DNA of 60,403 nucleotides, the filler included, from Sluysia triapertura (taxonomy: Eukaryota): assembly GCA_046118255.1 (NCBI GenBank). It is 4 parts of 4 records of this genome, joined end to end, with 100 filler letters (N's around TTAATTAATTAA, not from the genome) between each part and the next. Parts side by side here need not be neighbours in the genome. Positions count along the whole stretch, not along the records: positions 44,373 to 60,403 come from JBJNIA010212698.1; 3 more parts are not named here. One strand, written 5' to 3'. Under the pieces are notes generated by a model. It saw nothing but the letters and a program-made list of their open reading frames with translations, was not told the DNA's origin and ran no database searches. Made by a program: the position numbers and the translations under genes. Of the stretch, positions 4,846 through 60,403 are shown in pieces. The first letter of the stretch is position 1, and every line of letters begins with the position of its first letter.

Positions 4846-7519
4846 TAAAAGTTTATAAAGTTTTTAATTTATAATATATATATTTTTTTACAGAAAATTT
4901 TATAACTTTAATAGTTCACTAAGAACAAGACACCAGATAGAGAGTTTAACACACTAGAATGTAAATGCACTCCTCTCGGATTAAACGGAAGATAAAATTT
5001 TTAAATTAGACTTAGCTATATTTAACAAATAAAATATTAGGCCAAGTTTATTTTATTTATTGAATATGATAAACAATATGAAATTCACTAATATTCAATA
5101 AATAATATTTAAATAATAAATAAAATATACAAAGCTAATTTCCTTTCAGTAATAAAAGTTTTTTAATCATTCAACATGAGTTTTTAACATTTAACTTCAG
5201 CCTCGACAAAAAGGAAATAAAGGAAAACGAAAATAGAAAACTTGAAATAGAATTAAACACATTTAATTATAAAGGAAAAGCTACGTAACGAAAAATTTTG
5301 TGACTTTAATAAAGATAATCGAAAAAATACAAACTTAAATTAATTAGAGGCCATATATAATTACAAAAATGAATATATTTAGATTATGTGCACAAATAAC
5401 TATAGTTGTGAAATTAGCCATAAAATAGAATTAAACATAAAAAATTAACTATAGAAATATATCACATGAAATTCAAAAACTATTTGCCATAGTACAATAA
5501 CAGTGAAAAATTCTATATCATAATTTTCATTTTAATTCAACTCACATAATTTTATAGCAATTGCAAATTGTCGATTTTATAAATGTGCAAATACAATGCA
5601 ATTGCTGATTTATTTATTAAAATCTTATGTTGGTTTTTGTAAAAATGAATCAATATTGCAACTACAAAGGAAAAATAAGAATTAAATTTTGTATAATGTA
5701 CACGTTTGTTTTATTTATGAAATTAACTGTAGAGCCAACATTTCATATAAAATGCATTTATCACGATTTTGATGAATATGAAATTATCAGTACCACAGAT
5801 TCAGTTGTTTGGCAATAGGAAATAAAGTGTACGAGGAAAAAAGAACTTCCGATGGTAGCTATATTTAATATTTGATTTTTCTATTACGAGAATTTAACTA
5901 TAGGTGTGGAACAAGTTTTTAATTGTAATTTAGTTTTTATGAATACATCAAATTGAGTCAACGATAGATTGTATCAACGATAATTTTCAAAAAGTGTGTA
6001 ATTTCCAAAAATTCTAAAATATATTAAAATTCTGTAAAAAATATTAATTTTACAAATATACAGATCGCCTTTCCACTGTAACAATGGACAAATGATTTTA
6101 AATTATGCTTTAAAAAGTTCTAAAGGTTTCTGAATTCAAAATATTCATTAAAGATCCAGTAAAAATGTTTAAATTTAAAATGATTGTTAAAAAATAAAAC
6201 ATAACTTTAACAATGAATCTTAATAACCTTTAAGTTTGTTATCGGACTAATAGTGTGAATGTTCGTAGGTTAAAGGTTAATGGTGTTACCAAATGAAAGG
6301 ATTATTTTCAAATTATAAAGACTTTATAAATGGGCATTGATATAGTGTTATGTAATGGTATATGTTCAAGATGAGATTTTGTCTATGTGGTGTCGATAGT
6401 GAAATATAATCGTAGGTAAAGAGTTGAAGCGCAACAGCAATCACACATCTTCTAATATCTTCGAAATACCTTTATTTCACAATCTGGTTGTCATTACTAT
6501 TATCATTTTTAGTAGCTCTAGTACCTACCTCGAAATGCTTTAATATTAAAATACTCAAGTTTCAAATAAAATTATCAATTTTAATTATTTTTGTATTGTA
6601 TATTTTTATTTATTATTTGTTTAATATTATAATTATAAAATTTTATTTTTATTAATATATTTGCTCTATATAAGTTTTAAATACGTAAAAACATGTAACT
6701 CAATTTACTTTTAGATTTGACGCTTTCAAGTTTGAACACTATTTTGAAAACCTTGAATTTGTTACTTTAAGTTTGAAACCAAATGTTTTATTTTGAGCTC
6801 TTACATAAGAGAGACTAAAAGCCGTTTTGATTAGCAAAGTAGTAACTACGTCTATTTTTTCCCACACTTCTTTGGTATAGAAATTTGTTAATTTCGTAAT
6901 ACGTTTTTAAAGAAAAAACAATAAATTTGATATAACGTTAAGTATTGATCGTGAGTTATGGTCACTGATTCGTTTCGACATCAGGTAACTGGAAGTGTAT
7001 TGGTACATGTGTGGTGGCCCAGCCCTACATATCACATAAATCATAATGATCATCTACATAACCTCATCACAAAAAACACAACGAAGTTTATCCACATCAC
7101 TTGCAACACCATACCACTCATCCCTACAAAATTCCAAACGTATAATAAAAATTATTTCATTAATCACAACGCATTGTCACCTTCTCATCATTATGACGCA
7201 AATTCTTCTCGCATCTATCTTGTAATTTTTTATTTTTATATTTCTTTATTTCGTACTTTGTGTTATCAATATGTTGTTACACAAGTGTATTTTATTTATG
7301 TCGAATGTAGACACCAAAATAATATAAAATTATAAAATATTATTGTCCGTTAGTTATATATATTACAAACTATAATAATTTTCTAACGCCAAATCCAAAT
7401 TTACGATGATAAAACAAAAATTAATATTGCAATTAACCAGAACACACAAATCACAATATGTTCGAGCTAAATAACTGTTAAGCCAATGTACAAAGATGTC
7501 GTACCTAACTACATTTTGA

Positions 7520-44372: not shown

Positions 44373-46299
44373 ACTTTAAATTTTAAATATTTATTTATCA
44401 TTTTAATATTATTAGAATTAAATATTTATATTTGGAAAATAAACAATGGAGTTTAAAATATTTATGAACGGATACAAATAGCATATCAAATAAGGTATAA
44501 AATAAGCGTTACTACAAGTTACTACAAGTTACTATAATCGAGAAATAAAAGTAGCATGAAACAAAACTTATCGCGAGTATTCTATACAAGAGGAGAAATG
44601 TATTTACGGTGATTATACTTTACAAAAGGCTTCATTCAAAGAAGAATTTAATTACGGGAATATCAGTATCTGTATCGTCAAGATATATTTATATTTACAA
44701 TCTTAAGGTTCTAAACGTCGTTTGAACACTCTTCGGTGATTTATTATGTCCTATAATAAGTATGCTATTTGTTTTTATGTTTATTGCAATATTGTTTGCA
44801 TCAAAATAGACGTAAATTCTTTTAATTCGTTAACAAACTCAAGTATCAAACCTGAGTTAAATTCCATTTAAAATCTTATCATTGTGCGTCTTTCGCGTAA
44901 TATAAACCGTACATCACAGACGGACCCGTAATCTAATTTTATAATTGTTCTTAACTTAGAAAAAATTAGAACATATGGCATTCAGGACGCCCTAGATGTT
45001 TTCACCTTCACATCTCTGATTCCTTTTCTACTTCTTCATATTAATTATTACTATACTAAACTTATTCTTAACACCAATAATAACAATTTTATTTATCAAC
45101 TATTTTAAAGATTTTAAATACTCTCTAAGGTTACTCGAAGAACCCAGATACTTATCAAGAATAAGGTCACACATAATCACAAGAATACCTTCAAAGGTTT
45201 TTCACGTCCATTTCAAGCTTCCACAATATCTCAACACCTTATATATCGGTCTTTGGAAGTCAGGTATTCTTCAGCTCGCAACACAACTGTAATTATTTCC
45301 GTTTTCGTCATTCATACTCCAACAATACTTTCTTGTTTCTATTCATCGTTTGAATTAATTTTTTGTAGTGTTGTAATTTCTTGCGTTTTCATCCATCTTC
45401 TATTCCACTGTTAGGCGATTCCAACTTATCTCATTCAGACGGAAATGTCTGTCCTCAGACATCATAATAATTTCGAATAACAGACCATAATGGCCTGAAA
45501 ATGCAGAGGAAATCAAACCACCAACATCATATTCTATATTTCATCTTTAGAAAATCCGTAACAACGAAAATCGCGCATTTTAAACACTAGTAATATTTTG
45601 TCCAGTAATGATTTAAATAAATTCAAATCAAATTGTAAAAGTCAAAACACGTTTTGGAACTATTTCTTAGACAAAATTAATTCATTCATAGATTAGCCTC
45701 AACAAAATTGATCTGACACAGTTACTAAAATAATATTAAAAAGTTTTACCACCACCAATTTAAATGGAATACTGTTCGAATTGAAGTTTCAAGAACACTC
45801 ATTCAAAAAATAATTCATCAAAAAGCATTAAATTAACTCAAAATAATACTTTAATACCATGATTTCGTGTACATCTACAGAGACCAAAAATGTGTACTTC
45901 GATCCGAAGGAAAATCACACCCACAAATACAACAATTATTACACGAAAGCCACTCAACTTTAGAAAATAATTTCAAATTAAAACATTAAAATGTGCCTTT
46001 TGACACAATTTTAAATTAAATTAATTAATTAATAATATAAATAAATGTAATTTAATAAATTTAATTTAATGAATTTTGTTTAAAATTACTAATTTTATTT
46101 AAACAGGCTATTTGAAATTTTTAAATTTAGTGAGTGAAAAATAACTGTAGCACAAATCAATATTGTGCAGAAAATTTTCTGCACATCGTTGACATTTGTG
46201 CAAAATCAATACGCACATTTATATATACCTATATAGGAACACATGTGGTATATTTATCAAGTAATATTAAAATGACAAATAATCAACCTTACAAATGTA

Positions 46300-46652
46300 A
46301 ATTGATTATTCTGGATTAAATGATCCAATATCTTGTGATAAGCAAATTCGAAGAAATTTAAAAAAATTATTGAATATTCAAGCATTCGAGAGAATTGTTG
46401 ATAGGTTATATTTATTAACAATATTATATTTTTTGTATTTAGGAAGGACAGTGTATTAAAAAGTCTAGTTAAAGATTTAGCAGAAGCTGATGAACAATAT
46501 ATGGTTGTTTTGAGAAGTTATGTTATCATAATAATTATATTATCTTCAGTTTAAAATTCAAAGCTAAATCTAATCATGAAGGAATTGTACGAAAAATGAA
46601 AAACGATTTATGACCAAGGAATGAGCATCATTTCTTCCCAAATGAATATTGA
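46300..46652 (+). pseudogene. CCDC65: Dynein regulatory complex subunit 2 (CCDC65/DRC2) pseudogene fragment retaining a 38-nt intron
   Basis: QAFERIVDR|KDSVLKSLVKDLAEADEQYMVVLRS across intron 46405-46442 matches recalled CCDC65 [34 protein letters not shown]. Stops and frameshifts occur on both sides. Confidence 0.8.
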
Positions 46653-46815
46653 AGTAGCTGCTGTTGCAGTAACATGGGAACCCCCCGAATTAAGCCTAAT
46701 GGAATTATACGTAAATATCATATACATTACACACTATATTCCGACAAACCATTATCATTGTGGCAACAATACACGATACGATCAAAAGATAATGTTGATC
46801 CATCTGCAAGTATTT
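46653..46815 (+). pseudogene. FN3 domain remnant (LAR/DCC-like)
   Basis: AAVAVTWEPP, then after a frameshift KPNGIIRKYHIHYTLYSDKPLSLWQQYTI. Confidence 0.7.
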
Positions 46816-47013
46816 TATTATAAAAACTTAAACTTATACTTACAAAATAATCTGGGCGAAGAAGTTCTAATTAGATTTCCATAACCTTAACAACAAATAA
46901 TGATTTTAATAGAGTAGTTTGTCTAAAAGAAGTAAAACAATAACAACTGTTCAAATCAATGCGTAACTGGTAGCTTGTATATTAAACTCAACAATAAAAT
47001 TAAAGGATGTTAA

Positions 47014-47135
47014 GACAGCCTTATTACGGTCTGTCAATATATTGCAAAATAAATTTGTATATTGAGTCAGCCTTCTTACGGTCCGACCAATTTAATTACA
47101 GTTTTAATGTTAAATCAACCTTTTTACGGTCTGAT
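47014..47135 (-). ncRNA. Array of three conserved 22-nt bulged-A stem-loops (cis-acting RNA element)
   Basis: AUCAG-A-CC-GUAAAAA-GG-UUGAU (47135-47114), GUCGG-A-CC-GUAAGAA-GG-CUGAC (47087-47066) and GACAG-A-CC-GUAAUAA-GG-CUGUC (47035-47014). Confidence 0.75.
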
Positions 47136-47150
47136 TATGTATTCAATATT

Positions 47151-47456
47151 TTAATTACTTAATACTTTTCTTAAATCGCTTAAAGATGAAAGGAAAGGTG
47201 GTGAGATAATAGCACAAAGGAGCGCCTCAGACGTTGGAAATTCGATGGCCTCTACAAACATTCCGTAGGAACGGGTTAAGGCCGAGAAATTAAGAGTTGA
47301 AGGGTCTTCAACTCGCAGAAAAGAGGGGCATTGCCAACCGTTAAGGTTACCACTCCTCGCGCCACAGCGATATAGAGTGTCTAAATCAATAGGGCCATTC
47401 GCCAAATCTCGCAAAGAAATAAGCGGGCAGTTGGGATTTAGTGAGTAAAGATATGA
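47151..47456 (-). CDS. Orphan, relatively GC-rich ORF remnant
   Basis: About 101 open codons (SYLYSLNPNCPLISLRDLANGP...LRKVLSN*) with no upstream ATG. The frame extends to about 47700 through two stops. Confidence 0.4.
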   Translation of the reverse strand, partial: SYLYSLNPNCPLISLRDLANGPIDLDTLYRCGARSGNLNGWQCPSFLRVEDPSTLNFSALTRSYGMFVEAIEFPTSEALLCAIISPPFLSSLSDLRKVLSN

Positions 47457-48174
47457 CTAAATTTTGTGTAAGCTCACTTCTCAGCTGAGTAGTCGGGAAA
47501 GAAAACAGGTGAAGACAAAAGTAGAGCAGAATTTATTTCTGGAAATATAGAAAGACTTAAGTTGTGAAATAAGTTTGGCTCTGGGATGGGGTTTGTTTGA
47601 CGGATTTCGATTGTTGGAAATCGTTAATTGATATTCTGTCAATACATTGAATAAAATTATAAAAATGAGGAGTACATAGAAATAAATTAAAAGTAATTTT
47701 TATATCTGTGACCTGGCACTACTTTTTCTTGAGAAAAGGGTTATTAACTAAGTGTCTATTTAATTTATAAAATTTTCTTAATTGCTGTTACCGATAATTT
47801 CTTTTCTGGGACTTAGTCAGTCCCGGTGGATAATCAGGTTCATGCACCCAAATCCATTATACAAACATGAACATTTGTTGCATGTATAGGCTGAAAAATG
47901 TCTACAATAGATGATCCGGATGTAATATACTTAATAGTGAATTCGTACGAGCAGCGAAGCGAAGAGAAGTTGGAGATGTGTAACTGAAAAGAAAAATATA
48001 ATAAGTTAATAATTCATACACAATATGAATACAAGGAAATTAGCTACAGAGAAAGTTTAGTGTAATGAGAATTACAGTAAAACGAATATAAGTTTATTAT
48101 ATTAAAATGAATTAAACATAATACTTATATAATAAATTTATCCTACTTATACTAATAAAATATGAGTTTTAACA

Positions 48175-48186
48175 TCACCCTCTCAC
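48175..48186 (-). promoter_or_regulatory. Polypurine tract of the Gypsy element (imperfect)
   Basis: GTGAGAGGGTGA immediately 5' of TGTT on the minus strand, downstream of the integrase. Confidence 0.65.
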
Positions 48187-48779
48187 GACCGAAAATGGAC
48201 AGTTGACACCCGTCACATATGGTCATCAAATAAAGGATATCATCACTCATATTTTATATTCGAATTGTAAATTAAGTTTTAATAAACAAGTGGATGATAA
48301 TATTGAATGAGAAAAATAACAAATAGTCTATAATTTAAGATGAAAATATTGGACTGCTTATTGTTAGAAGGAACATTAACTTTAAGAGTGCAATTTGAAT
48401 AATTTTCTATTTATTTAGTCGCTACAATATTTTGCACTTTATAAGTTTTTCTTTTAGTTTCCAATGCAAATACTATTATCATTGGTCTATAAGCATGTTG
48501 TAAACGTGGAATCTTATCCACATGATGGGGTTTACCAATTATCAGTGATTCTAAGTAAATGCAGTAAATATCAAATTCATGACGTTAAAACATTTTCTTT
48601 CAGCTAAATTTTATTTCCCAATACTCGTTATAAATATTTGTAATCGATATTTTTTGTTCTTTCACATTATTAATTGCGGCGTATAAATTCATATATTCCT
48701 TATCTTCTTCAATATCCGTAGACTTAACGAAATTAATTAAAGATAGGAGAAAAACTATTACTATTAGTAATAGTGTCCA

Positions 48780-49205
48780 CCATGATTTATTAATACTATA
48801 AATGTTTGCATTAGTGAAAGTGAGCATTACCGTATCAATAGAGCCAATTCCTAATGATTTCGAAAATTCTCTCGTTACAGATGATAGCGATGAGTCAGTA
48901 GATGACTCTTTCCATAACATATCAGATAATCGAACAGACAGGATCAGTAGATTCAAAATTAGGTGTTGGAACACGAATTGGAGTTTCATATGGAGTGCAG
49001 AACAACTTGAGGTATTATCATTTGCGACCCTTCCTGGAATTTTATAAAACCGAGTTTGCTATGTATTACTATATCATCTAATTTGTCAATTATATCTAGA
49101 CCGATTATTAAATCAAAAGGGGAATCTTCCCAAACGTATATATGCATTTACGCGTTGATCCAATATAGTTAAATGGACGTGCATTATTCGTAGCTGGATG
49201 TAACG
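48780..49205 (-). mobile_element. Foreign retropepsin-region fragment interrupting the integrase
   Basis: Integrase similarity stops at CLFAYRV. It is followed by VHLTILDQRVNAYIRLGRFPF/DLIIGLDIIDKLDDIVIH, an aspartic protease C-terminal D.I.G.D motif. Confidence 0.55.
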
Positions 49206-49613
49206 AACTCTGTAAGCGAAGAGACATGGTGCGATAGATAAGTCCCAGTCTGATTGTCTATCATTAACATATGATTGTAGCATGTTTATTAGAGTTCGAT
49301 TAAATCGCTCAACTAGTCCATCATTTTGCGGATGATATGATGTGTATATTCTAAGTATGTCGAATATTTTTGCCACTGCTTTAATTGCATAACTGGTAAA
49401 GTTCGTACCTTGGTCTGTAAGTAATTTTTGGGGTGTGCCATATCTATAAATTATTTTCTCTACGAGTATTTGTGCAACTGCCTCAGTTTTTTGATTTGGC
49501 ATTGGATAAGCTTCGGGCCATTTAGTTTGAGAGTCTGCACATACAATAATATACTTATTTCCACTAATAGTTTCTGGTAACGGTCCCATTATATCTATTG
49601 CTGTAAACTCCAT
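49206..49613 (-). pseudogene. Gypsy integrase catalytic core (rve)
   Basis: D-D-E motifs as listed for the element. Confidence 0.92.
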
Positions 49614-51856
49614 AGGTTATAATTGCACTCTTGTCTTAATTCCTGAATTTTTTCTTCTACAGCAGATTGAACAATACTTACACCATTTTAAATATCTTCT
49701 TCCACATCTTCCCAGTAATATTTGTCTTTTATACGCGTTAGTGTTTTTCTCATGGACAAGTATCCACCTAACTGTCCATCATGAAATTGTATTAAGATTG
49801 GTGTTATTAATGATTTTGGGATTATTGTTTTCCAATCTTCTTTTGAATTCTAAATCGAAGAATTACATCTTTAATAGCTAATCTTTTTGCCTGATTTTCG
49901 ATTAATGTCCCTTTCACCAATGAATCAACAATGGATGAAATTTCCTTATCTTCCCTTTGGTGTTTGACAACTTAATATTTAAAGTTAATATTTCCTTTGA
50001 TAATCGTGACATACAATCAGCACCATTATTCTATGACCTGGCTTATAAATAACTTCCAAATCGAACTCTGATAATTTATTAAACTATCTTTTTAGTCTAC
50101 TAACTTCGTAAAGGTAAACTTTTTGTCCTAAAAGGTAATGCCTGAATAATTTACTATAGCTAAACATTTCCTTTCTATTGTAGAGAAGTTCATTTCGGCT
50201 TTATTTAAACGTCGATTAGCTTCTAGGTTATTCTTATGTTTTTGCTCTAAAATTGCTCCAATAGCATAATTACTAGCATCGGTAGTTAATAAATTAATAA
50301 CCGGAAAAATTAATATTGGTGCCATAGTTAACCTCTTTTAATTCTTTGAATGATTTTGTTTGTTCCCTTCTCCACCGAAATTCAACATCTTTCTTTGTCA
50401 TTTTTCTAAGTGGTTGTGCTATTTTAGTGAAATTCTTAACAAATCTTCTATAATAATTAGCTAAACCCAAAAAACTTTGTATCTTTTTTAAGTTGTCTGG
50501 TTGTGGGAATTTAACTAATTTTTCAATATTTATCGGATTGGGTTATATTTCGTCTTTCGACACTATATAACCTAAAAATTCAACCTTCTCCTTAGCCCAG
50601 ACACTTGGTAGGTTTGATTTTTAATTTAGCTATTTCTGGTCCACTTAAAATATTGTCAATATCCTTTACATGTGTGTCAAAATCTTAGAGAATATTATTA
50701 TATCGTCAATATACACCATAACATTTTTACATCCTGATAGTACGAAATTCATGCACCGCTCGAAAGTCGCGGATGCACCCATCAATCCAAATGGCATTCA
50801 TCATATAATTCATCATCGCAAGTGAATGCAGTTTTGTGTTTGTCTTTTTCGGTGATAACCAATTGTAAATGAAGAGTTGTGAAATATGTAGCATTCTCTA
50901 ACTTATCAAACATTTCATTTATTTGTGGCAATGGGAATACGTCTTTTCTTGTTATTTTATTTAATTCTCTAAAGTCTATATAGAATCTCATTGTACCATC
51001 TTTTGTGACTAATAGAACTGGAGATGAGATGGTGAAAAACTTGGCCTTTCACATAATATCTAATTGATACTGCGCGTCTCTTTTTGATTACGTATCGGTA
51101 TTCTGTATGGTTTCTTACGAATTACTTTGCCTATTATTAGTGGTGTTTCGTGTTTTGATATTACTGAATCTCCAACATATTTATTTTTTGCTATTGCCAT
51201 CGGATATCGATAAATAACGTCATATAATTGATCTAATTGTTTCGTGGTTAAATTTTTATTAGTGATTTCAGTTTCACCATAATCCTCGTCTTGGATTTCT
51301 CGTAACTTTATATTATTTTTGATCTTATTTTCCAACTTATTTTTATCTTCCATTATCGTATTAATATGTGCAGGTATTTTGTACTTAACAATTTTTCCTA
51401 ACTTTGTTCCAGTGTAAAGCTATTTGTTGTCATTCGTATAATTTATAATAATTTATTTTCCTTCACAATTATTACTTACTATTATTACTTGCTATTCCTA
51501 TATCTAGCTTTTCTTGATTAGATTCTGATGCAAAAAACATAATAGTCCCAGTTAATAGGCTGTTTGTTTAGCTGACATTATATATTCACTTCTTTTTAAT
51601 AACCAAAGTGGTTCGTCTATGTACACATCATCATCGCCGATAACTCTTTTTGATCGACTATCCATCAATCTTACTTAATCAAAATCTAATGTAATTCCTT
51701 TTAATTTTGAGAATATATTCATCCCCATTATCATTTTTTATGACTCGTAACTTAATTTCTAATTTATTTTGTCCCAATTCTATCTCACCCAATTCAATTG
51801 TGTGTCCTCAAACATCATAAATCATTAATTTCAATATCGGAAAGCTGCGCATTCGG

Positions 51857-51874
51857 ATCACGGCGGGTTCACCA
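51857..51874 (-). promoter_or_regulatory. Primer-binding site complementary to tRNA-Trp
   Basis: TGGTGAACCCGCCGTGAT matches the canonical Trp PBS TGGTGACCCCGACGTGAT at 16/18. Complementarity continues into the T-loop (CCGAA). Confidence 0.8.
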
Positions 51875-51893
51875 AATATCAGATTTCATAAAA

Positions 51894-51966
51894 TGGACTG
51901 ACCGGGGATCGAACCTGATACCTCTCGCTGCGTAGTTCGATGCTCTACCCAATAGCTATCAGTGCC
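51894..51966 (-). mobile_element. tRNA-like Pol III head (pseudo-tRNA or SINE head)
   Basis: GCACTGA-TAGCTATTGGGTAGAGC...GGTTCGATCCCCGG-TCAGTCCA has A and B boxes and a 6/7 acceptor stem, but poor anticodon and T stems. Confidence 0.75.
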
Positions 51967-51989
51967 GTCTAACAATTTTATTTTATTAT

Positions 51990-52690
51990 AGTCAATATTA
52001 CCATCATGGCACCTTAGGCCTATATCCCAACACATCTAACGGAAATTTTAAGTTAATTAATTTTTAATAAAACTTATTCGATTAAATTTTCATCAGAAAA
52101 CAGTGGTGGTCAAGGCGCTGTCAGTAATCCTATTGAAATACAAGTCAGAGCTGGAGTTGTACAAGCACCACAAAATTTTACAGTAACCGCCATATCATCT
52201 GAAATATTATTACAATGGGAACCATTTACATCAACATCATTATTAAAATTTGATTAATACAGATTATTATTCTATCCTGAAAATCAGCCTTATTAACGAT
52301 CAACAAAACAATGGAAATGAACTTATAATTCTAGAAATATGACAATTTTTCAATTACAACCGAACACTACAAACGGAAAATGGACTTTATGATAAAGTTA
52401 TTGTACTAATTTGTTACGAGAATCAAAACGTCAGTTAATATATCAGCTGTTCCAATACATTCGACAGCAATTCAAGCAACTTGGCAAGTAATGGATCTAG
52501 TATTACTAAAAGATGTTCTAGCATTTCAATTAATTTGCAGTGAGCACACTGAAAACAAAACCCAAATTGAATCGGTACAGTCGTTTCTTTCACGTGAAGG
52601 TTAATATGATCCTTATCGATTCATATTCGATTAAACAATACGAAATGTCCGGTTGTGGAAATGGTATTCCTTTAGGAATTGTGTGACTTG
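51990..52690 (+). pseudogene. Tandem FN3 repeats of a LAR-type receptor-like protein, pseudogenised
   Basis: NKTYSIKFSSENSGGQGAVSNPIEIQVRAGVVQAPQNFTVTAISSEILLQWEP...*YRLLFYP...IFQLQPNT, then VNISAVPIHSTAIQATWQ. Contains in-frame stops. Confidence 0.8.
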
Positions 52691-55663
52691 TTACTAGTAG
52701 GGCTTTTAATTGCATGGCTAAAATTGTTGTATGATATATAAAAACTGATAAATAAAAGCTGATAATGTTAATATTATCCATAACATTCGTACACACTTTG
52801 TATTTCTATTTAAAATGCTTGTTAAACCATGAGTCCTTGTTTCACTTACTCAATATTTACAGACTTTATTTGTCACTCGTAAACTATAATACAAAACTGA
52901 CAATGCTTTTATATTAAATCGAATTAGGCAATTATAGTTAATGTATTTAATCATATTAATAATAATAAATAATAATAAAAATATTAATATTTAAATTGAA
53001 AAAAATAATTTTAATAATTTTAACTCGTATTTAATTGTTTGATATAAATTTTAAATACTTCATATTTATTGTAATTGATTTTATTTTTTAATGTCAGATT
53101 AAGGGTAATTTTTATTTTTATGGAATTGCGAAAGCGATTTCGTAATTAACTTCGAATAACACGTAAATACATAACATATTGATAAAACATCAAAGAGATC
53201 ACATACACTAATAATTATATTTATTATATCTACTTTTCGTATTATGCATATGGCTAATAATACCTACAATATTATTAAACACTAAAATACTAAAATACTT
53301 CATTTTTTATCATTAATTAGTTAACATTTTTAGACGACTTACTCTTAAACTATAAGATTTATAAAATTTTCACATTCATTTCTGATGTATTTTGCCGTGA
53401 AAATTCATTTATATATCATTCGTCTACATTGAATTCTCGACCTATTACAAGGTAGTCACATGAAATATAACTTTATTTTGAATTATACCATGTGAATGTT
53501 TTTCTTAAGTGTTATTTTGAAAACCCCAATCCTTTGAAATCTTAGAAAAATACAAAAATTAATTTTCCACGCAATTCAACAAGACAGAAAATATTTGCTT
53601 CTCGGATATGACTTTCTTCATGATCAGTATCCCACACTAACCTTTCTAAGACAACTCTACCATCTGTTAAAAGATTTAAAGAAACAGCTCTTAACACTTA
53701 TAGCAACATAGATTTTAACAATGATATATTATACTCAAATATGATATATCATCATAATCTTAAAGATTTATTTAAAATGACAGTTATAATTAAAATTGAA
53801 TAAATGATTTCAACTTATAAATGTATAACATTAACTTATGTACATTATTTTTGTATTATTTATATTCGAACTTATTACTTCAAAAAAATAGAATAAAAAT
53901 AAGAATTTTCGGCTGATATATTTTTTTAATTATTAAAAACCGTTAAATTGAATTTTGGGGTTATAGTGGCCTACATAAGTTTTAATAATAATAATGATAA
54001 TATTAACAACAATATTAATAATAATAATGATTTTAATAATACTAATGATCATGTTTATAATAATAATAATGATAATAATAATAATATGTGGAATAATAAT
54101 ATTGATAATAAATGATATTATTATTGATGATTAAAATAACTACAGTAGCATCAAATATACTAATATTAATGACAATAGTGATTTTATTAATGGATTTTAT
54201 TCAAGTAGTAAGGATTTTTAAAAATATATTAAAACTCTATAAATTAGTTATATTTTACTTCTCATCCGATTTAAAAGGATCAGATTTAAATTATGTAATA
54301 TAATGCGTTTAATTAATTTATAAATCCTAAAACAATCAATGGATACATTAAAATAAAATTTACCAATATTCAAAAGTAGAGTAATCAATTACTCTAGAGT
54401 GATTACTTTAAATGCAATATTTTTACAATTTCTTAGATATAAGACTTTACTTTATAAATTTCTATATACATAAATTACTTTATATGTATATAGAAATATA
54501 GAATTTATCCAAATTATTATAAAAATAATAATTGAAGTATCAAAATTTTGATTAAAATTTTATAATAACCAAATTAAAAGGTTACATAAAAATTCAATTA
54601 AATAAATATTATTTCACGTTTAAAATCGCGATTGCCTTACAATGTAAAAAACTAATGATTGTACAAAACATACGTTCATGGATGAAGTTGAGGATTGAAC
54701 TAATGATCAGCAATTCAATAATTACACAGAGATAAAATCGATTCGCAAATTAAAATTTGAAATATAAACATGTGAACAATTTAATCTATTGATTAATTAA
54801 TCGTTAAAAAATCTTGCTTGAAAATGGGTTTGGTAAGTACAAAATTGTTAATAAAAATTGTGACCTTTAAAATCATACAGTTTTACAATTATGTTTAGTA
54901 CTTAAAAGTACTATTGTTTAAAATTATTATTATTATTAACATTTGTTAAACAATTATTCAAAAATCTGAAGATTTCTAAATTAAATTAATTTAACTAAGT
55001 TATAATAAAATTATTAAATTTAAACTATAAATTTAAATAATAATATCAACAAAAATAATATCAAGAATACCAAAATTATACAAGAATAATACAAAATATA
55101 CAAAAATAATGAAAGAGTCAGACAGTTTTAGACGATGATAAAATAATACTAATTCAAAACTAGAATTTGTAATGAAAACAATAATGTCTATGTTAGAATT
55201 AGAAGTTTCTAATTTTTTAATCAATAAATTGTAATAAGGATGATTTTAATCTTTTGAAAATTCCAAACATTTAAAAAGTTTTCAATATGGCGACTAATTT
55301 AATCACTATATGAATAATCACAATATAAAAAAACGAATTAGCTGTGTTATTAAAATTGTGTTTAAGTAGTTGAAATTTCTCTGCTTTATATACCAATAAT
55401 TAGCCAATGACATTCAACTACTGGTGAATTTATTTATTTCTTATTTAAACACTTGCATTTATATTATCTATTCATTTTAATAAGTAGATAATAGTTAGAT
55501 AAAAATTAATTTAAATTTTATTATTATTGACTAGTATTATTCATCAAATAAAGATGAGTGTCGAGAACCCTAAATTAAAACCCTCATACGACAGTTAATT
55601 ATAATTTGTCTTTTTCCACATCTTTATGAAATTATTTAATTTATTTTAGGATTTTTTATTGTA

Positions 55664-56241
55664 CGCTTTTTGGATTTTTTACGTAATTTTTGCACGAATA
55701 ACCTTGAATCAATTAAGTAATATAAATATTGAAAAATAAAAATGTGGAATTAGTTTAAAAATTCGGCATTATTTATCTTAAAAAATTGATAAAGCAGTTA
55801 GTGGAGAAGATTATAAAGAAATAAAATATACAAGATTCACCATTATCGAGGATTAAAAGATAATGATTTGATTTCGAGACTTAATTTGAAATACTAGCCA
55901 CCTTATTTTCCTTTTTTAAATCCAATAGAAAATGTTTTTTTGGGTTGGAAAAATTTATTTATCCGAGATGGCGCAGAAAATGAAACTGAATTGAAAAGAT
56001 TAATTTTTGATAAATTTGGAGAAATAACTCCAGAACATTGTAACGCTTTTTATAGGAAAATGCTGTCATATATAAATATGAGTGTAAAGAATCCTAAAAT
56101 AAAAAACCAAATTTCTATTTTTAATTTTCATTTTTTAAATTCACTAATTCAATATTTTTACTTCTCAAATATTTATATTACCTAATTGATTGCAAGGTTT
56201 ACTCTATTCATGCACAAATTACGCAATAGATCTAAAAACCC
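55664..56241 (+). mobile_element. Internally deleted Tc1/IS630-family transposon with long degenerate TIRs
   Basis: LKY*PPYFPFLNPIENVFLGWK is the DDE third-acid motif. Imperfect inverted repeats of about 80 nt lie at 55664-55745 and 56150-56241. TA flanks. Confidence 0.85.
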
Positions 56242-56875
56242 TACATATTATATTCAATTTTAACCGAAATATTGGTATATTGTAATAAATTTTCAGATTT
56301 TATAGCTTTAGATAAATAGTATAAATTTCCTGTCCGATTACGTATATTCAAATCGATATGATTTTAACAACTTGATCTGTATTAGACTAAATATTGATCT
56401 GTACTTTTACTATTTATGAAAAATTTTATCATTATTAAAGAATAATAATACAGTATGATTCAAAAAAAGCTCAAAGAAGTTAACCAATTAATGACCAAGC
56501 TTTAAATTGTGATTAAATTTTTTCATTTTTCTCAATTATGTGCATTATTCATCCAACTTAATGTAGGAACTTACTACATTTATGGTAACGAATGATAAAA
56601 GCCATCGTAATAATAAGAAAATATGAAATCAAGGATAGATAATACTACGTAATAACTATAGTTGCCAGTTGTCATTAATAAATTAACTACTACAACGATT
56701 TCTAGTGACGGGCAATGTTAACACATTGAAGACGGTAAGAATTCTTGCATATTGTGTTGAAATAATATGAATTAAAAGTGATACTTTCGAAACAGTGTAA
56801 CATTTATTAAGTTTAATACATTATTAAAATTTATGAGCATATGTAATGCTACTTCTAGATTGAAAAATAAAAACG

Positions 56876-56877
<2 letters not shown>

Positions 56878-56943
<66 letters not shown>
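56878..56943. repeat. (AAT)n microsatellite
   Basis: Perfect run. Confidence 0.95.
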
Positions 56944-57279
56944 TAAAGTGCACAACAAGTATTGAAAAAATATTTTTAATAATGAAAAATATATAAAATA
57001 TTTTTTATGATAAAATCAGTAAAAACACAGTATTTGCAACTTTAAGTAATATTAGTTAATTATTGATTATAATAATAACTAATAAAAACTAACATATCTA
57101 GTGAAGTTAAAGTGGCTTCTGAACAGGTAAATGAAGAGTCCCTTACTCTCTAAATATTTTATATTCAATAAATTTATCATAATAATGTTATTGCGTAAAA
57201 AATTGAAAAATTTCTTTAAAAATAGTGATAAAAACGAGCAAATTGTATACCAGCATTTGAAATAAATAAATAAATTACA

Positions 57280-57475
57280 AACAGAAACTTTCGAACAGAC
57301 GAAAAGAAAAAATAACAAATACAAAAAGCACCACATGAATACTTTAAGCAAAATTTTATTTGTGGCTAGCTAAACCAATAAAATAAAAGCTTTTATACGC
57401 CCAATTGCCTGTGATAACGTTATAAAAAATAAATTAACTGAACCCCAAAAGTTTTGTTTGAATCCCTGATTATAT
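57280..57475 (-). pseudogene. Possible MFS-type membrane protein exon remnant
   Basis: Acceptor followed by YNQGFKQNFWGSVNLFFITLSQAIGRIKAFILLV* and a hydrophobic continuation. Confidence 0.3.
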
Positions 57476-57984
57476 CTAAAATAAATAGGATAAATTTTCA
57501 ATAAATTTTACAAAAGGAAAATTTCGTAGAATAGCTTTCTTTTAATATTTTTAGTTTTAAGACCATGAGACCCATTTTTGGTATGTTACTTTCGTAAACT
57601 TTATAAAATTCCATTTTGAATAATAATTTCATATTTGTTATTAATGAACATTTTTCATATTCTAAATTTAAATATTATTTCTTGTTTTATGATGAATTAT
57701 TTCTATTTCTAAAATTTATACATCACAATCAACTGTAATTCTATTTTCAAAGAAATTAGAGAATTAACCCTTTAAATTATCCAAAAGATGCATATTTATC
57801 TAACAGTTATTACGATTTTTTATTATATTGACATGTAAAAATATAGAACTTCCATGATATTTCTTTACACAGGTCGTTTTTAAATATCTTCATCATTAAT
57901 ATTTTTGCAACCTCAGAACACCATTTCATAATTTAAATTCATATAAATACAATAATTCTTATTTTTCACTTAAATGTTATTGGA

Positions 57985-58545
57985 TTTCAATTTCTAATAT
58001 GAATTTTGAATTTAATATAATGGCTAGATTTAACTGTTTAGAAGAAAATATCAATTGCGCTATCAAAAAATGTAAATATCAATTGAAGAATATTAGAAAA
58101 TTTATAACTAATTTTTGATAACAAATAATATAGATTATAATAATGGATTATTATACTGAACTACATACAAAAGTGCAAAAGTGTAAATCAATCAGCAAGA
58201 ACTTTTCATTGGTTACCAATAATAGCAAAGTGGAATAAAAATCATGATAATAATTTATAAATGCTTACATTATAGAAATCATGACTATTTCTTAGTGATA
58301 ATGAATATGTTGAAACCACAACGAATGTGTTTTTAAAATATAACAATTTGTACAGAATTTGTCTAAAAAAATCTATAAACATTTATCACAGATTATCAAA
58401 TCATTCGAAAATTAGGAAAAAATTTAAAGACTGTTCTTTCTATTTCAAAGATATTATGACGAACAATGACGCATTCTGAGCACTTTTAGTACATATTTCA
58501 TAATCATCATCATCAGCATCATTATTGTTATTATTATTATTAACT
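57985..58545 (+). mobile_element. Old L2-type LINE 3' portion with (CAT)n/(TTA)n tail
   Basis: Collinear with 30840-31250 (aaaaaatgtaaata.caatt, cattggttaccaataa, aaatgcttacattat). Confidence 0.75.
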
Positions 58546-59861
58546 CATTCGATTATTAGTAGAATTAAAATTGAAAAATTGTGAATGCTTGTTAAATAGA
58601 TTGTCTTTAAATCGTATTATTCAAATTAATCAATGAAGCGCCAAATTTTCTTAAATATGTGTTTACTCATGTTGAAGTGAATGAAGTCATATTTATATAA
58701 TAATATATAACTGAATAAACCACTTTTATGATAAAGTGGATTCTTAAAGAACTACTCCATTATTTATTTTAGCATTATGGAAAATATTGCAACAATCATA
58801 CAATCAAATGAAAATAAAACACCAATAAATATTTAGGATTATATACATACATATATATATATATATTGGATTTTTCAAATTTAGTCAGAAAAGTAGTATG
58901 ACTAATAGTTTGTATCTGACATTTAAGAATTTTCATATTTTTACTAATAATGTACTTTCTATTGTGATTCAAATTGTTAAGGAAACATTGAATTCAACAT
59001 AATAAATGTACCCATTTGTTTAGCCGACCTTTGCACTCTAAATTTCCATTTTCTAAAGAACCAGTTTTCTTTAGCTTTGTATTTGTTTTCGGATACAAAT
59101 TTATACTTTTGTAAACCATTTTAAATATATAAATTATATAAAATATATAAAATGATTTTATAAATGAATCTATAATTGAAATTCGCTTTTTAATAAATTA
59201 GTAACGGATAACTCATTACTCATACTATGAAACAGTACAACGGCATTTTTTCAATAATACTTTTACATATGGTTTTTTTAACATTGAAGAATTATCAAAT
59301 AATATTTGTAGTTTTATGTAAAATTAAAATTAAATAAAATCACAACTAAATACATTTAGTTATACTATTGCATTAGGAAATAAAATCGAATAAGCAACAT
59401 TTAAAAATGGAAATGGTTTCATATTTATCATCCTTGAAATAACAAAAATTTTAAAATGATTATAATACAAATATTAAAACAATCGCTCATTTAATAAATT
59501 ATATCAATGACATCTTTTCAACATCGTCTAAATTTATAAATGCAAATTATATCTTCTGCTACACACTTATTTAATTCCAATTTAAAATTCTGTTATTTTC
59601 ATTTGATAATATTTAATTTTGGTTAAAAAACAAAACCTTCAAGCATCTTTATGTGAAAATAGTCACACTATTTCGCTTTAGCCTCATTATTTTGAGTTAT
59701 GCATTATTCTTTTTCTTTGTGTCAAATTTACTGATATCAAAAAAAACGTTACGTATGCGAAGTAAAAATGGATTGGCGGGATCTTTACGGAATATTAACC
59801 AAAATTTAAATTTTGCATTTTTAATAAATTGATTAAATTGTATTCAAATTGATTATCATAC

Positions 59862-59882
59862 CTGTTTTGATAAATCAATTTC
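59862..59882 (-). CDS. Candidate 21-nt microexon (EIDLSKQ) of the MFS gene
   Basis: TTTTCAAG|GAAATTGATTTATCAAAACAG|GTATGA, phase 0-0, compatible with the upstream exon. Confidence 0.5.
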
Positions 59883-60029
59883 CTTGAAAAAGAAAAATAA
59901 CAATTACTATGTATGAATAAAATATAACTGTAACCCGTGTTTCATTTTATTGGTAAATAAAACTGTTCGTACATGATGAAAATGCACATTATATTAATAA
60001 TTAATTAATAAAAATAATCAAAAACTAAC

Positions 60030-60156
60030 AATAATTTCTGGCATCTGTTTTGGAAATAAAAGCAAAACTCCAATAAATTGCATAATGGCGTATATAGATC
60101 CAAGTAGAACAAAACTCCACGGAACTCGATTTAACAGTTCAATTTCACCAAAATAT
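60030..60156 (-). CDS. Exon of an oxalate:formate antiporter-like MFS transporter
   Basis: TTATAG|...|GTTAGT exon encoding YFGEIELLNRVPWSFVLLGSIYAIMQFIGVLLLFP. It matches the YF....LL.RVP..F..LG..Y..MQ.IG motif I recall from invertebrate OxlT-like proteins. Confidence 0.7.
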
Positions 60157-60287
60157 CTATAATAAAACTAATATTATTAATTTTTAATCTACCAAGCGCA
60201 CATTATCAATGTCATAATTTTATTACTAAAATTGTTTATTTAATTATGAATATTAGACCATAACATGAATTATATTGTAATAATAAT

Positions 60288-60325
60288 TAACCCCTTAACT
60301 CGCACACTCGAATTAACTCGAGCGA
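60288..60325 (+). mobile_element. piggyBac-like terminus
   Basis: TTAA|CCCCTTAAC followed by the palindromic CTCGAATTAACTCGAG. Confidence 0.35.
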
Positions 60326-60403
60326 TTTATTTTGACATGTTTAGGTAGAAAATATATCTAACCAACATATACTGATATAATAAATAAATATCATATTTTT
60401 CAT

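What the first reader, a model, noticed from the sequence alone, without database searches (positions are those of the whole stretch)
47008..47140. Three tandem co-varying RNA hairpins with MS2-operator-like geometry at the distal end of a Gypsy LTR-like region
Seen: three 22-nt units spaced 48 and 52 nt apart with unrelated AT-rich spacers. On the minus strand each folds as 5-bp stem / bulged A / CC:GG / GUAANAA loop. Stem pair 1 is A-U, G-C, G-C and pair 2 is U-A, U-A, A-U, so both show compensatory change. Pairs 4 and 5 vary only to G.U, which would be A.C mismatches on the plus strand, so the structure is strand-specific. That strand is the sense of both the retrotransposon and the ORF ending 15 nt upstream. 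Each unit is followed by UUAACA or UCAAUA, resembling a repeated LTR att end. Known: a 5'-side bulged A two pairs below the loop is the geometry of the MS2 coat-protein operator, and a bulged-A hairpin is the packaging signal of yeast L-A totivirus. Inference: this is a selected, multivalent protein-binding RNA element for packaging, export or translational control, recognised by Gag or by the adjacent orphan ORF product. I know of no described family for it.
Basis: partly seen in the sequence, partly recalled or inferred. Interest (0 to 1): 0.82.

Follow-up and report, generated by a model that had tools for sequence, protein, structure and literature searches.

The report
Hairpin-core 48-nt repeat, short array
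The three small hairpins are real and keep their base pairing, but they are three units of a roughly 48-nt repeat that also occurs at other places in this AT-rich eukaryotic genome, so they are not a signal specific to the nearby Gypsy remnant or the adjacent open reading frame.

Summary
Three 22-nt units lie at 47014-47035, 47066-47087 and 47114-47135. On the minus strand each folds as a 5-bp stem, a bulged A, CC:GG and a GUAANAA loop. None is expected by chance. All 21 pair cells are standard pairs, two pairs change on both sides, and two G.U pairs lie on the minus strand.

- With three sequences the column-shuffle control is not significant (74/500). My own substitution simulation gives p of about 0.0004-0.004.
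- Contigs of the only available run show the units elsewhere, joined by at least six other AT-rich spacers, five of them 26-27 nt. This points to a tandem repeat of about 48 nt: hairpin core plus linker.
- The sequence between the hairpins and the decayed Gypsy pol (47167-47560) is single-copy, and no LTR pair exists in the piece.
- The adjacent ORF has no credible relative.
- Rfam holds no matching family, and scans of metagenome, viral and prokaryote collections found no relatives.

Best reading: a short, old array of a dispersed hairpin-core repeat, probably linked to a transposon or satellite. The hairpin is the constrained part. Whether it acts as RNA or as single-stranded DNA, and what binds it, could not be tested. 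Interest is moderate.

The parts
47014..47035 (-). Hairpin unit 1: GACAG / bulged A / CC / GUAAUAA loop / GG / CUGUC
   Evidence: RNA -9.2 kcal/mol, z -3.56; CM 54.7 bits
47066..47087 (-). Hairpin unit 2: GUCGG / A / CC / GUAAGAA / GG / CUGAC. Pair 4 is G.U.
   Evidence: RNA -9.6 on the minus strand against -5.4 on the plus strand; 51.9 bits
47114..47135 (-). Hairpin unit 3: AUCAG / A / CC / GUAAAAA / GG / UUGAU. Pair 5 is G.U and pair 1 is A-U.
   Evidence: RNA -5.4 kcal/mol; 53.0 bits
46988..47165 (.). The whole short array: three monomers of 48-52 nt, each a 22-nt hairpin core plus a 26-30-nt AT-rich linker. The linker ends in ATGTTAA / ATATTGA on the plus strand, which reads UUAACAU / UCAAUAU after each hairpin on the minus strand. 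This is the only multi-copy stretch in its neighbourhood.
   Evidence: family D7; bin 46970-47166 far deeper than its neighbours; joints 47036-38 to 47100-10 with other letters between; linkers of 26-27 nt in 5 of 6 other loci
47154..47456 (-). Adjacent stop-to-stop ORF of 101 codons (87 from a TTG start), in a GC-richer single-copy stretch. There is no evidence that it is a gene or that it belongs with the hairpins.
   Evidence: (one 674-nt contig at depth 16.7 covers 47109-47782)
49113..51420 (-). Decayed Ty3/Gypsy pol remnant (RT, RNase H, integrase) with at least 4 frameshifts and many in-frame stops. It is multi-copy in the genome and lies about 2 kb upstream of the hairpins on the minus strand.
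   Evidence: (rve, E 3e-11)

Best explanation
The three hairpins are three diverged monomers of a tandem repeat family of about 48 nt. Each monomer is a 22-nt imperfect palindrome plus a 26-nt AT-rich linker. The family is dispersed at several to many loci of this AT-rich, transposon-rich eukaryotic genome, most likely as the internal or subterminal repeat of a mobile element or as a satellite-like repeat.

Shown here:
- The units recur elsewhere with the same spacing and other linker letters.
- The hairpin core is far better conserved than the linker.
- Pairing is kept through substitutions.

Inferred:
- The core is constrained because it must fold as a hairpin in single-stranded form.
- That form is more likely the minus-strand transcript than single-stranded DNA.
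- A protein reads the invariant apical part (bulged A, CC:GG, GUAANAA loop), and the tandem copies give multivalent binding that serves the repeat's own propagation.

The array is not demonstrably part of the Gypsy LTR and is not tied to the adjacent ORF.
For: -: three matches against 0 expected.
- the bin 46970-47166 is far deeper than its neighbours (7168 against 400 and 24). At least eight contig joints link a unit-1-like end to a unit-3-like start with different intervening letters, each at ordinary depth of about 18-50. Five contigs lack one loop base at 47023.
- the rebuilt linkers of the other loci are 26-27 nt in 5 of 6 cases, giving a period of 48-49 nt like the local 48 and 52. They share AAT at the start and (A)TGTTAA at the end.
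- 22 invariant columns are concentrated in the core and the immediate flanks.
- 21 of 21 cells are paired and 2 pairs are compensatory.
- six random stem substitutions leave all pairs intact in only 0.04-0.4% of simulations.
- the minus-strand RNA folds are the more stable, clearly so for unit 2.
- as DNA the hairpins are weak (-3 to -4 kcal/mol), and at 7 bp they are too short for cruciform extrusion (established knowledge).
Against: - Only three units could be read in full. The other copies were seen only through summary tables of contigs, so pairing across the family is untested.
- The tool warns that summed contig depth is not a copy number and may include other organisms, so the abundance estimate is soft.
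- Tandem Repeats Finder does not call the array, because the monomers are less than 70% alike outside the core.
- No terminal inverted repeat, target-site duplication, transposase or second array was found in the piece, so the carrier element is unidentified.
- No RNA data exist.
- Apparent compensation could come from intrastrand template switching in palindromes rather than from selection.
Confidence: 0.5

Rival explanations
1. The hairpins are a multivalent RNA signal of the Gypsy element, in its LTR or 3' untranslated region, or of the adjacent ORF's mRNA. Gag or the ORF product binds them for packaging, export or translational control.
For: - The hairpins are on the sense strand of both pol and the ORF.
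- Pairing is kept, with G.U only on that strand.
- The apical part is invariant.
- LTR sequence more than 20% diverged would not have been laid at the 80% threshold, so the single-copy gap does not strictly exclude an old LTR.
Against: - No direct repeat that could be an LTR pair was found.
- 47167-47560 is single-copy whereas pol is highly multi-copy.
- The units occur at other loci as regular 48-nt arrays with only AT-rich linkers around them.
- The ORF has no ATG at its start, no Pfam hit and no real relative.
- The three loci fetched around related Gypsy integrases hold no such hairpins.
Confidence: 0.15
2. A neutral minisatellite. The palindrome has no function, and its arms stay complementary through a mutational process such as hairpin-templated repair or template switching during replication. 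The core looks conserved only because it is GC-richer and less prone to slippage than the AT-rich linker.
For: - The period is constant with diverged linkers.
- The shuffle control is not significant with three sequences.
- The array sits in a decayed, transposon-rich, AT-rich region.
- Template switching can create compensatory-looking double changes in one event (own knowledge of Loytynoja and Goldman's work).
Against: - Arm-to-arm copying should erase the bulged A and the two G.T mismatches, yet the bulge is kept in all three units.
- The 7-nt loop is invariant except at one position, which pairing-based repair does not explain.
Confidence: 0.2
3. A signal at the DNA level. The units are subterminal binding or processing sites of a DNA transposon: hAT- or CACTA-type subterminal repeats, or hairpins read on single-stranded DNA by a Helitron- or IS200-like HUH enzyme. 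The piece would hold one end of a fragmentary element.
For: - The multi-copy signal is confined to about 200 bp that abut single-copy DNA on one side and moderately repeated DNA on the other, as expected for a transposon end shared with non-autonomous derivatives.
- All units have the same orientation.
- Imperfect palindromes with an extrahelical base are what HUH transposases recognise in bacteria (own knowledge of IS608 and REP/RAYT).
Against: - There is no inverted array or terminal inverted repeat anywhere in the 16-kb piece.
- There is no transposase or Rep/helicase remnant next to the array.
- No CTRR-type Helitron end follows the hairpins.
- DNA hairpin energies are low.
Confidence: 0.15

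Closest known systems
MS2 (Emesvirus) coat-protein operator hairpin
   Same: The stem geometry is the same: a 5-bp lower stem, a single bulged A on the 5' side, and 2 bp between the bulge and the loop (the operator structure is from own knowledge).
   Different: - The loop here is 7 nt (GUAANAA), not the 4-nt AUUA.
- This is a eukaryotic genomic repeat present at several loci, not a single site at a phage replicase start.
- No coat protein is present.
- The likeness is a resemblance of shape, not homology.
Su(Hw) binding-site array of the Drosophila gypsy element
   Same: A cluster of short conserved motifs separated by AT-rich variable spacers, near or within a Gypsy-type element (own knowledge).
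   Different: - Su(Hw) sites are non-palindromic double-stranded DNA sites inside the element's 5' untranslated region.
- The units here are imperfect palindromes whose arms co-vary.
- They are separated from the pol remnant by single-copy DNA.
Bacterial REP/BIME elements and their RAYT transposases
   Same: Short imperfect palindromes at many copies, with stem variation that keeps pairing, often clustered with variable spacers. They are recognised as hairpins (PMC3479197, listed; own knowledge).
   Different: - REPs are bacterial and usually alternate in orientation within a cluster.
- This is a eukaryotic context (Gypsy, Tc1-like remnants).
- All units share one orientation.
- No HUH gene was seen.
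- The prokaryote scan found nothing related.
Tandem-repeat cores of MITEs, Helentrons and satellite DNA with dyad symmetry
   Same: A constant monomer length of about 48 nt, short arrays dispersed among transposons, and a dyad-symmetric box inside an AT-rich monomer (own knowledge).
   Different: The linker has diverged beyond Tandem Repeats Finder detection while the hairpin core is kept. This uneven conservation is not typical of neutral satellites. No carrier element could be defined.
3' tail stem-loops of stringent-type LINE/SINE pairs (e.g. UnaL2)
   Same: A small hairpin with a conserved loop and co-varying stem, read on the sense RNA by the element's own protein and present in many copies (own knowledge).
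   Different: Those hairpins are single and sit just before a terminal short repeat or poly(A). Here there are three copies in tandem and no terminal repeat follows.

Membership tests
Any Rfam 15 family | Covariance-model match at or near the gathering score | tested here: not met
   No match at E<=1 in 44373-60403. Only three chance-level matches (E 3-7.6, far below gathering) in 46900-47800, and none on the hairpins.
MS2-type coat-protein operator | Bulged A on the 5' side, two base pairs below the loop | tested here: met
   All three units fold with A16 bulged and CC:GG above it.
MS2-type coat-protein operator | Four-nt loop (AUUA/AUCA) with adenines at fixed positions, at the start of a levivirus replicase gene | tested here: not met
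   The loop is 7 nt, GUAANAA. The context is a eukaryotic repeat.
Gypsy/Ty3 LTR | Two direct copies flanking the internal gag-pol region | tested here: not met
   No long direct repeat in the piece. Sensitive blastn of 46800-49150 against the rest of the piece gives only AT-rich matches of 60-67% identity. Heavy decay could hide an old pair.
Gypsy/Ty3 LTR | Repeated in the genome together with the internal region and contiguous with it | tested here: not met
   47167-47560 is at single-copy depth (about 24, one 674-nt contig), while pol bins reach 10^4-10^5 and the hairpin bin reaches 7168.
Tandem (satellite or minisatellite) repeat | Head-to-tail units of constant period | tested here: met
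   Local periods are 52 and 48 nt. Five of six other loci give 48-49 nt.
Tandem (satellite or minisatellite) repeat | Whole monomers alignable (called by Tandem Repeats Finder) | tested here: not met
   TRF at minimum score 30 finds only an unrelated 6-nt repeat. The linkers are too diverged.
DNA transposon or MITE subterminal repeats | Terminal inverted repeats with a second, inverted motif array, and a target-site duplication | tested here: not met
   A covariance-model search with filters off finds only the three units on either strand of the 16-kb piece. The other end could lie beyond the edge of the piece.
CRISPR array | Near-identical repeats with unique spacers, in a prokaryote with cas genes | tested here: not met
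   The units differ at 5-6 of 22 positions. The context is eukaryotic.

The most novel reading that the evidence does not exclude
A eukaryotic counterpart of REP/BIME-like elements. This would be a genome-wide family of regularly spaced, structure-selected hairpins (bulged A, CC:GG, GUAANAA loop) with diverging linkers. A dedicated protein would read them on one strand of RNA or single-stranded DNA, as a multivalent handle for packaging or mobilisation. No such family has been described.
Probability: 0.15. Interest if true: 0.7.

Novelty: new member of a known kind. Interest (0 to 1): 0.38.

Why it matters
If pairing turns out to be selected across the whole family, this would be a compact, strand-specific protein-recognition hairpin carried in tandem by a eukaryotic repeat. 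That would give a natural multivalent tag and a handle on how the repeat spreads or is controlled. If not, it is one more short palindromic tandem repeat in a transposon-rich region. Either way it should not be annotated as a Gypsy LTR signal or as a regulatory element of the neighbouring ORF.

Tried and rejected
- **Rfam:** searched at permissive thresholds and found nothing.
- **Two-unit pattern scans:** JGI metagenomes, IMG/VR and GTDB genomes gave 32, 2 and 5 loci. All are unrelated tandem repeats without the stem arms, for example 51-nt coding repeats in Cohnella.
- **Covariance model from the three units:** no further copy in the piece, and none in three loci around related integrases.
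- **RNA evidence:** the only run holding the stretch is kept as contigs and is not on record as RNA, so expression and strand could not be tested.
- **Getting more of this genome through exact protein look-up:** the integrase ORF is not on record, and the best public relatives are only 45-64% identical.
- **Orphan ORF:**
  - The word search and Pfam were blank.
  - The exhaustive search gave three hits to unrelated giant repeat proteins (DUF11, C2, PTPRJ-like).
  - These scores are summed over 5-6 stretches, and pairwise BLASTP gives E 0.19, so I rejected them as artefacts.
- **Alternative genetic code (TAA/TAG as sense):** I considered this because 13 of 14 in-frame pol stops are TAA or TAG. 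I rejected it as unproven, because frameshifts remain and ORF lengths under table 6 do not exceed those of shuffles.
- **Literature search by sequence words:** only pUC-vector coincidences.
- **Topical literature searches:** no described equivalent.
- **Organism:** not identified. The atlas look-alikes say only 'Eukaryota'.

Full report
**Observation.**
- On the minus strand they read GACAGACCGTAATAAGGCTGTC (47014-47035), GTCGGACCGTAAGAAGGCTGAC (47066-47087) and ATCAGACCGTAAAAAGGTTGAT (47114-47135).
- Start-to-start spacing is 52 and 48 nt.
- A degenerate pattern for the unit, with up to 3 mismatches, finds these three sites and nothing else. The expectation is 0.00 in 100 dinucleotide-preserving shuffles.
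- Each unit folds alone as 5 bp, a bulged A, CC:GG and a 7-nt loop.
- The RNA minimum free energies are -9.2, -9.6 and -5.4 kcal/mol, with z-scores of -3.6, -2.4 and -2.7.
- The same three hairpins persist when the whole 171-nt stretch is folded.

**Pairing and strand.**
- On the aligned units, all 21 pair cells are standard pairs. Pair 1 is G-C, G-C, A-U. Pair 2 is A-U, U-A, U-A. Pairs 4 and 5 each vary once, to G.U.
- With only three sequences the tool's own column-shuffle control reaches the observed values in 74 of 500 shuffles. By that test the covariation is not significant.
- I also ran a substitution-based simulation. It places six random stem substitutions on three copies of the majority sequence.
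- All pairs stay intact in only 0.04-0.4% of trials, depending on transition bias.
- This shows that pairing is maintained by something, either selection or arm-to-arm copying. The test assumes a star tree and independent hits.
- Strand preference is weak. Units 1 and 3 fold nearly as well on the plus strand (-8.6 and -5.0 kcal/mol). Only unit 2 is clearly better on the minus strand, -9.6 against -5.4. Two G.U pairs out of two on one strand has a chance probability of 0.25.
- As DNA the hairpins are marginal, at -3 to -4 kcal/mol.

**Surroundings.**
- The piece is very AT-rich (15-35% GC) with AAT microsatellites.
- A Ty3/Gypsy pol lies on the minus strand between about 51400 and 49100. Pfam rve matches with E 3e-11.
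- This pol is heavily decayed, with at least four frameshifts and many in-frame stops.
- No pair of direct repeats that could be LTRs exists in the piece, either by seed extension or by sensitive blastn.
- The ORF that ends 15 nt before unit 3 (47154-47456, minus strand) has no Pfam hit and no word-search hit.
- An exhaustive phmmer search returned three giant, mutually unrelated repeat proteins: a Bacteroidota DUF11 protein, an Anaeramoeba C2 protein and a frog PTPRJ-like protein.
- Their scores are summed over 5-6 stretches, and pairwise BLASTP to the best one gives E 0.19. I treat them as artefacts.

**The decisive new fact.** It comes from laying the contigs of the only public run that holds this stretch.
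- The stretch 47109-47782 is covered by one 674-nt contig at depth 16.7. The bins 47167-47560 sit at about 24, which is single copy.
- The hairpin bin 46970-47166 stands at 7168, against 400 and 24 for its neighbours. The pol bins reach 10^4-10^5.
- The tool warns that summed contig depth is not a copy number, so I rest the claim on the joints table instead.
- At least eight distinct contig forms join a unit-1-like end (47036-47038) to a unit-3-like start (47100-47110). Each is at ordinary depth of 18-50 and each has different letters between.
- Five contigs lack one loop base at 47023.
- I rebuilt the linkers of these other loci from the tool's own letters. They are 26, 26, 26, 27, 45 and 26 nt, which gives a period of 48-49 nt in five of six. 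The local periods are 48 and 52.
- The linkers share AAT just after the hairpin and (A)TGTTAA just before the next one. Between these they are AT-rich and diverged.

**What this means.** The units are monomers of a repeat of about 48 nt: a 22-nt hairpin core plus a 26-nt linker. The repeat occurs at several to many places in the genome. It is not a private feature of this Gypsy copy or of the neighbouring ORF. Tandem Repeats Finder misses the local array because the linkers are too diverged. That in itself shows the core is much better conserved than the rest of the monomer.

**Relatives elsewhere.**
- Rfam 15 has nothing, even at permissive thresholds.
- A two-unit pattern found only unrelated tandem repeats in JGI metagenomes, IMG/VR and GTDB genomes.
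- A covariance model built from the three units finds only those three in the piece with filters off.
- The model finds nothing in loci fetched around the nearest public integrases, which are only 45-64% identical.
- The organism could not be named.

**How it most likely works.**
- Shown: a dispersed tandem repeat with a constant period; a core that is conserved while the linker drifts; stems that change without losing pairing; and an invariant bulge, CC:GG and loop (apart from one variable loop position).
- Inferred: the core is constrained because it folds in single-stranded form and a protein reads its apical part. Seven base pairs with a 7-nt loop are too short for cruciform extrusion in duplex DNA, and the DNA energies are low. 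A transcript is therefore the likelier substrate, followed by single-stranded DNA of a rolling-circle or replicative intermediate.
- Tandem copies would give multivalent binding.

**Rivals.**
- A neutral minisatellite whose arms are homogenised by template switching: 0.20. The retained bulge and the invariant loop argue against it.
- Subterminal sites of a DNA transposon or HUH-type element: 0.15. The sharp multi-copy/single-copy boundary near 47170-47190 argues for it. The absence of any inverted array, terminal repeat or transposase remnant argues against it.

**Comparison with known systems.**
- The stem geometry equals that of the MS2 operator (5 bp, bulged A, 2 bp). The loop (7 nt against 4) and the context fail the membership test.
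- The motif-and-spacer layout recalls the Su(Hw) site array of Drosophila gypsy. Those sites are non-palindromic duplex sites inside the element.
- The closest analogues in behaviour are bacterial REP/BIME elements and the dyad-bearing tandem cores of MITEs, Helentrons and satellites.
- I file the finding as a new member of the known kind 'short hairpin-forming tandem or interspersed repeat'.
- There is roughly a 15% chance that it is something more interesting: a structure-selected, protein-read hairpin family in a eukaryote.

**Limits.**
- Only three units were read in full, and the other copies were seen only through summary tables.
- There are no RNA data.
- The organism is not identified.

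Noticed in passing
window 47175-47470, minus strand: The GC-richer (about 40%), single-copy stretch next to the hairpins folds much better than shuffles on the minus strand (z -3.54, 0 of 200) but not on the plus strand (z -1.30). It has no Rfam match and no protein relative. It could be an unannotated structured RNA or an exon.
   Followed up: partly
window 45000-45393: Summed contig depth is extremely high (262,000 and 17,800 in two bins, against about 20 for single copy), with 121 contigs showing one variant at 45125. This is a very abundant repeat of unknown kind, and its ORFs have no Pfam hit.
   Followed up: no
window 52057-52254 and 52410-52601, plus strand: Two open stretches read like fibronectin type III repeats (Pfam fn3 E 0.002, below the cut-off). 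They may be exons of a host gene on the strand opposite to the Gypsy remnant.
   Followed up: partly
window 55898-56182, plus strand: An open stretch with a ...FLNPIENVF... motif looks like the C-terminal part of a Tc1/mariner-type DDE transposase. Pfam gave no significant hit.
   Followed up: no
window 49100-51050, minus strand: Of 14 in-frame stops inside conserved pol domains, 13 are TAA or TAG and only one is TGA. One TAG sits where Trp is expected and one TAA where Gln is expected. This fits GC-to-AT mutation pressure or RIP-like decay. An alternative genetic code was not supported.
   Followed up: partly
window 47210: The single contig of run X1 that covers this place reads G where the window has T. 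The run is therefore not letter-for-letter the source of the window, or one of the two carries an error.
   Followed up: no
window 53978-54110 and 56876-56945: There are long AAT/AAT-like microsatellites, including a pure (AAT)n of about 70 nt at 56876-56945.
   Followed up: no
L035, L037, L038 (Cohnella genomes): A 51-nt tandem repeat contains ACGGTCTGNCAGACCGTAAGAAGG and shares the 13-nt core by chance. It lies in GC-rich bacterial DNA and lacks the hairpin arms.
   Followed up: partly
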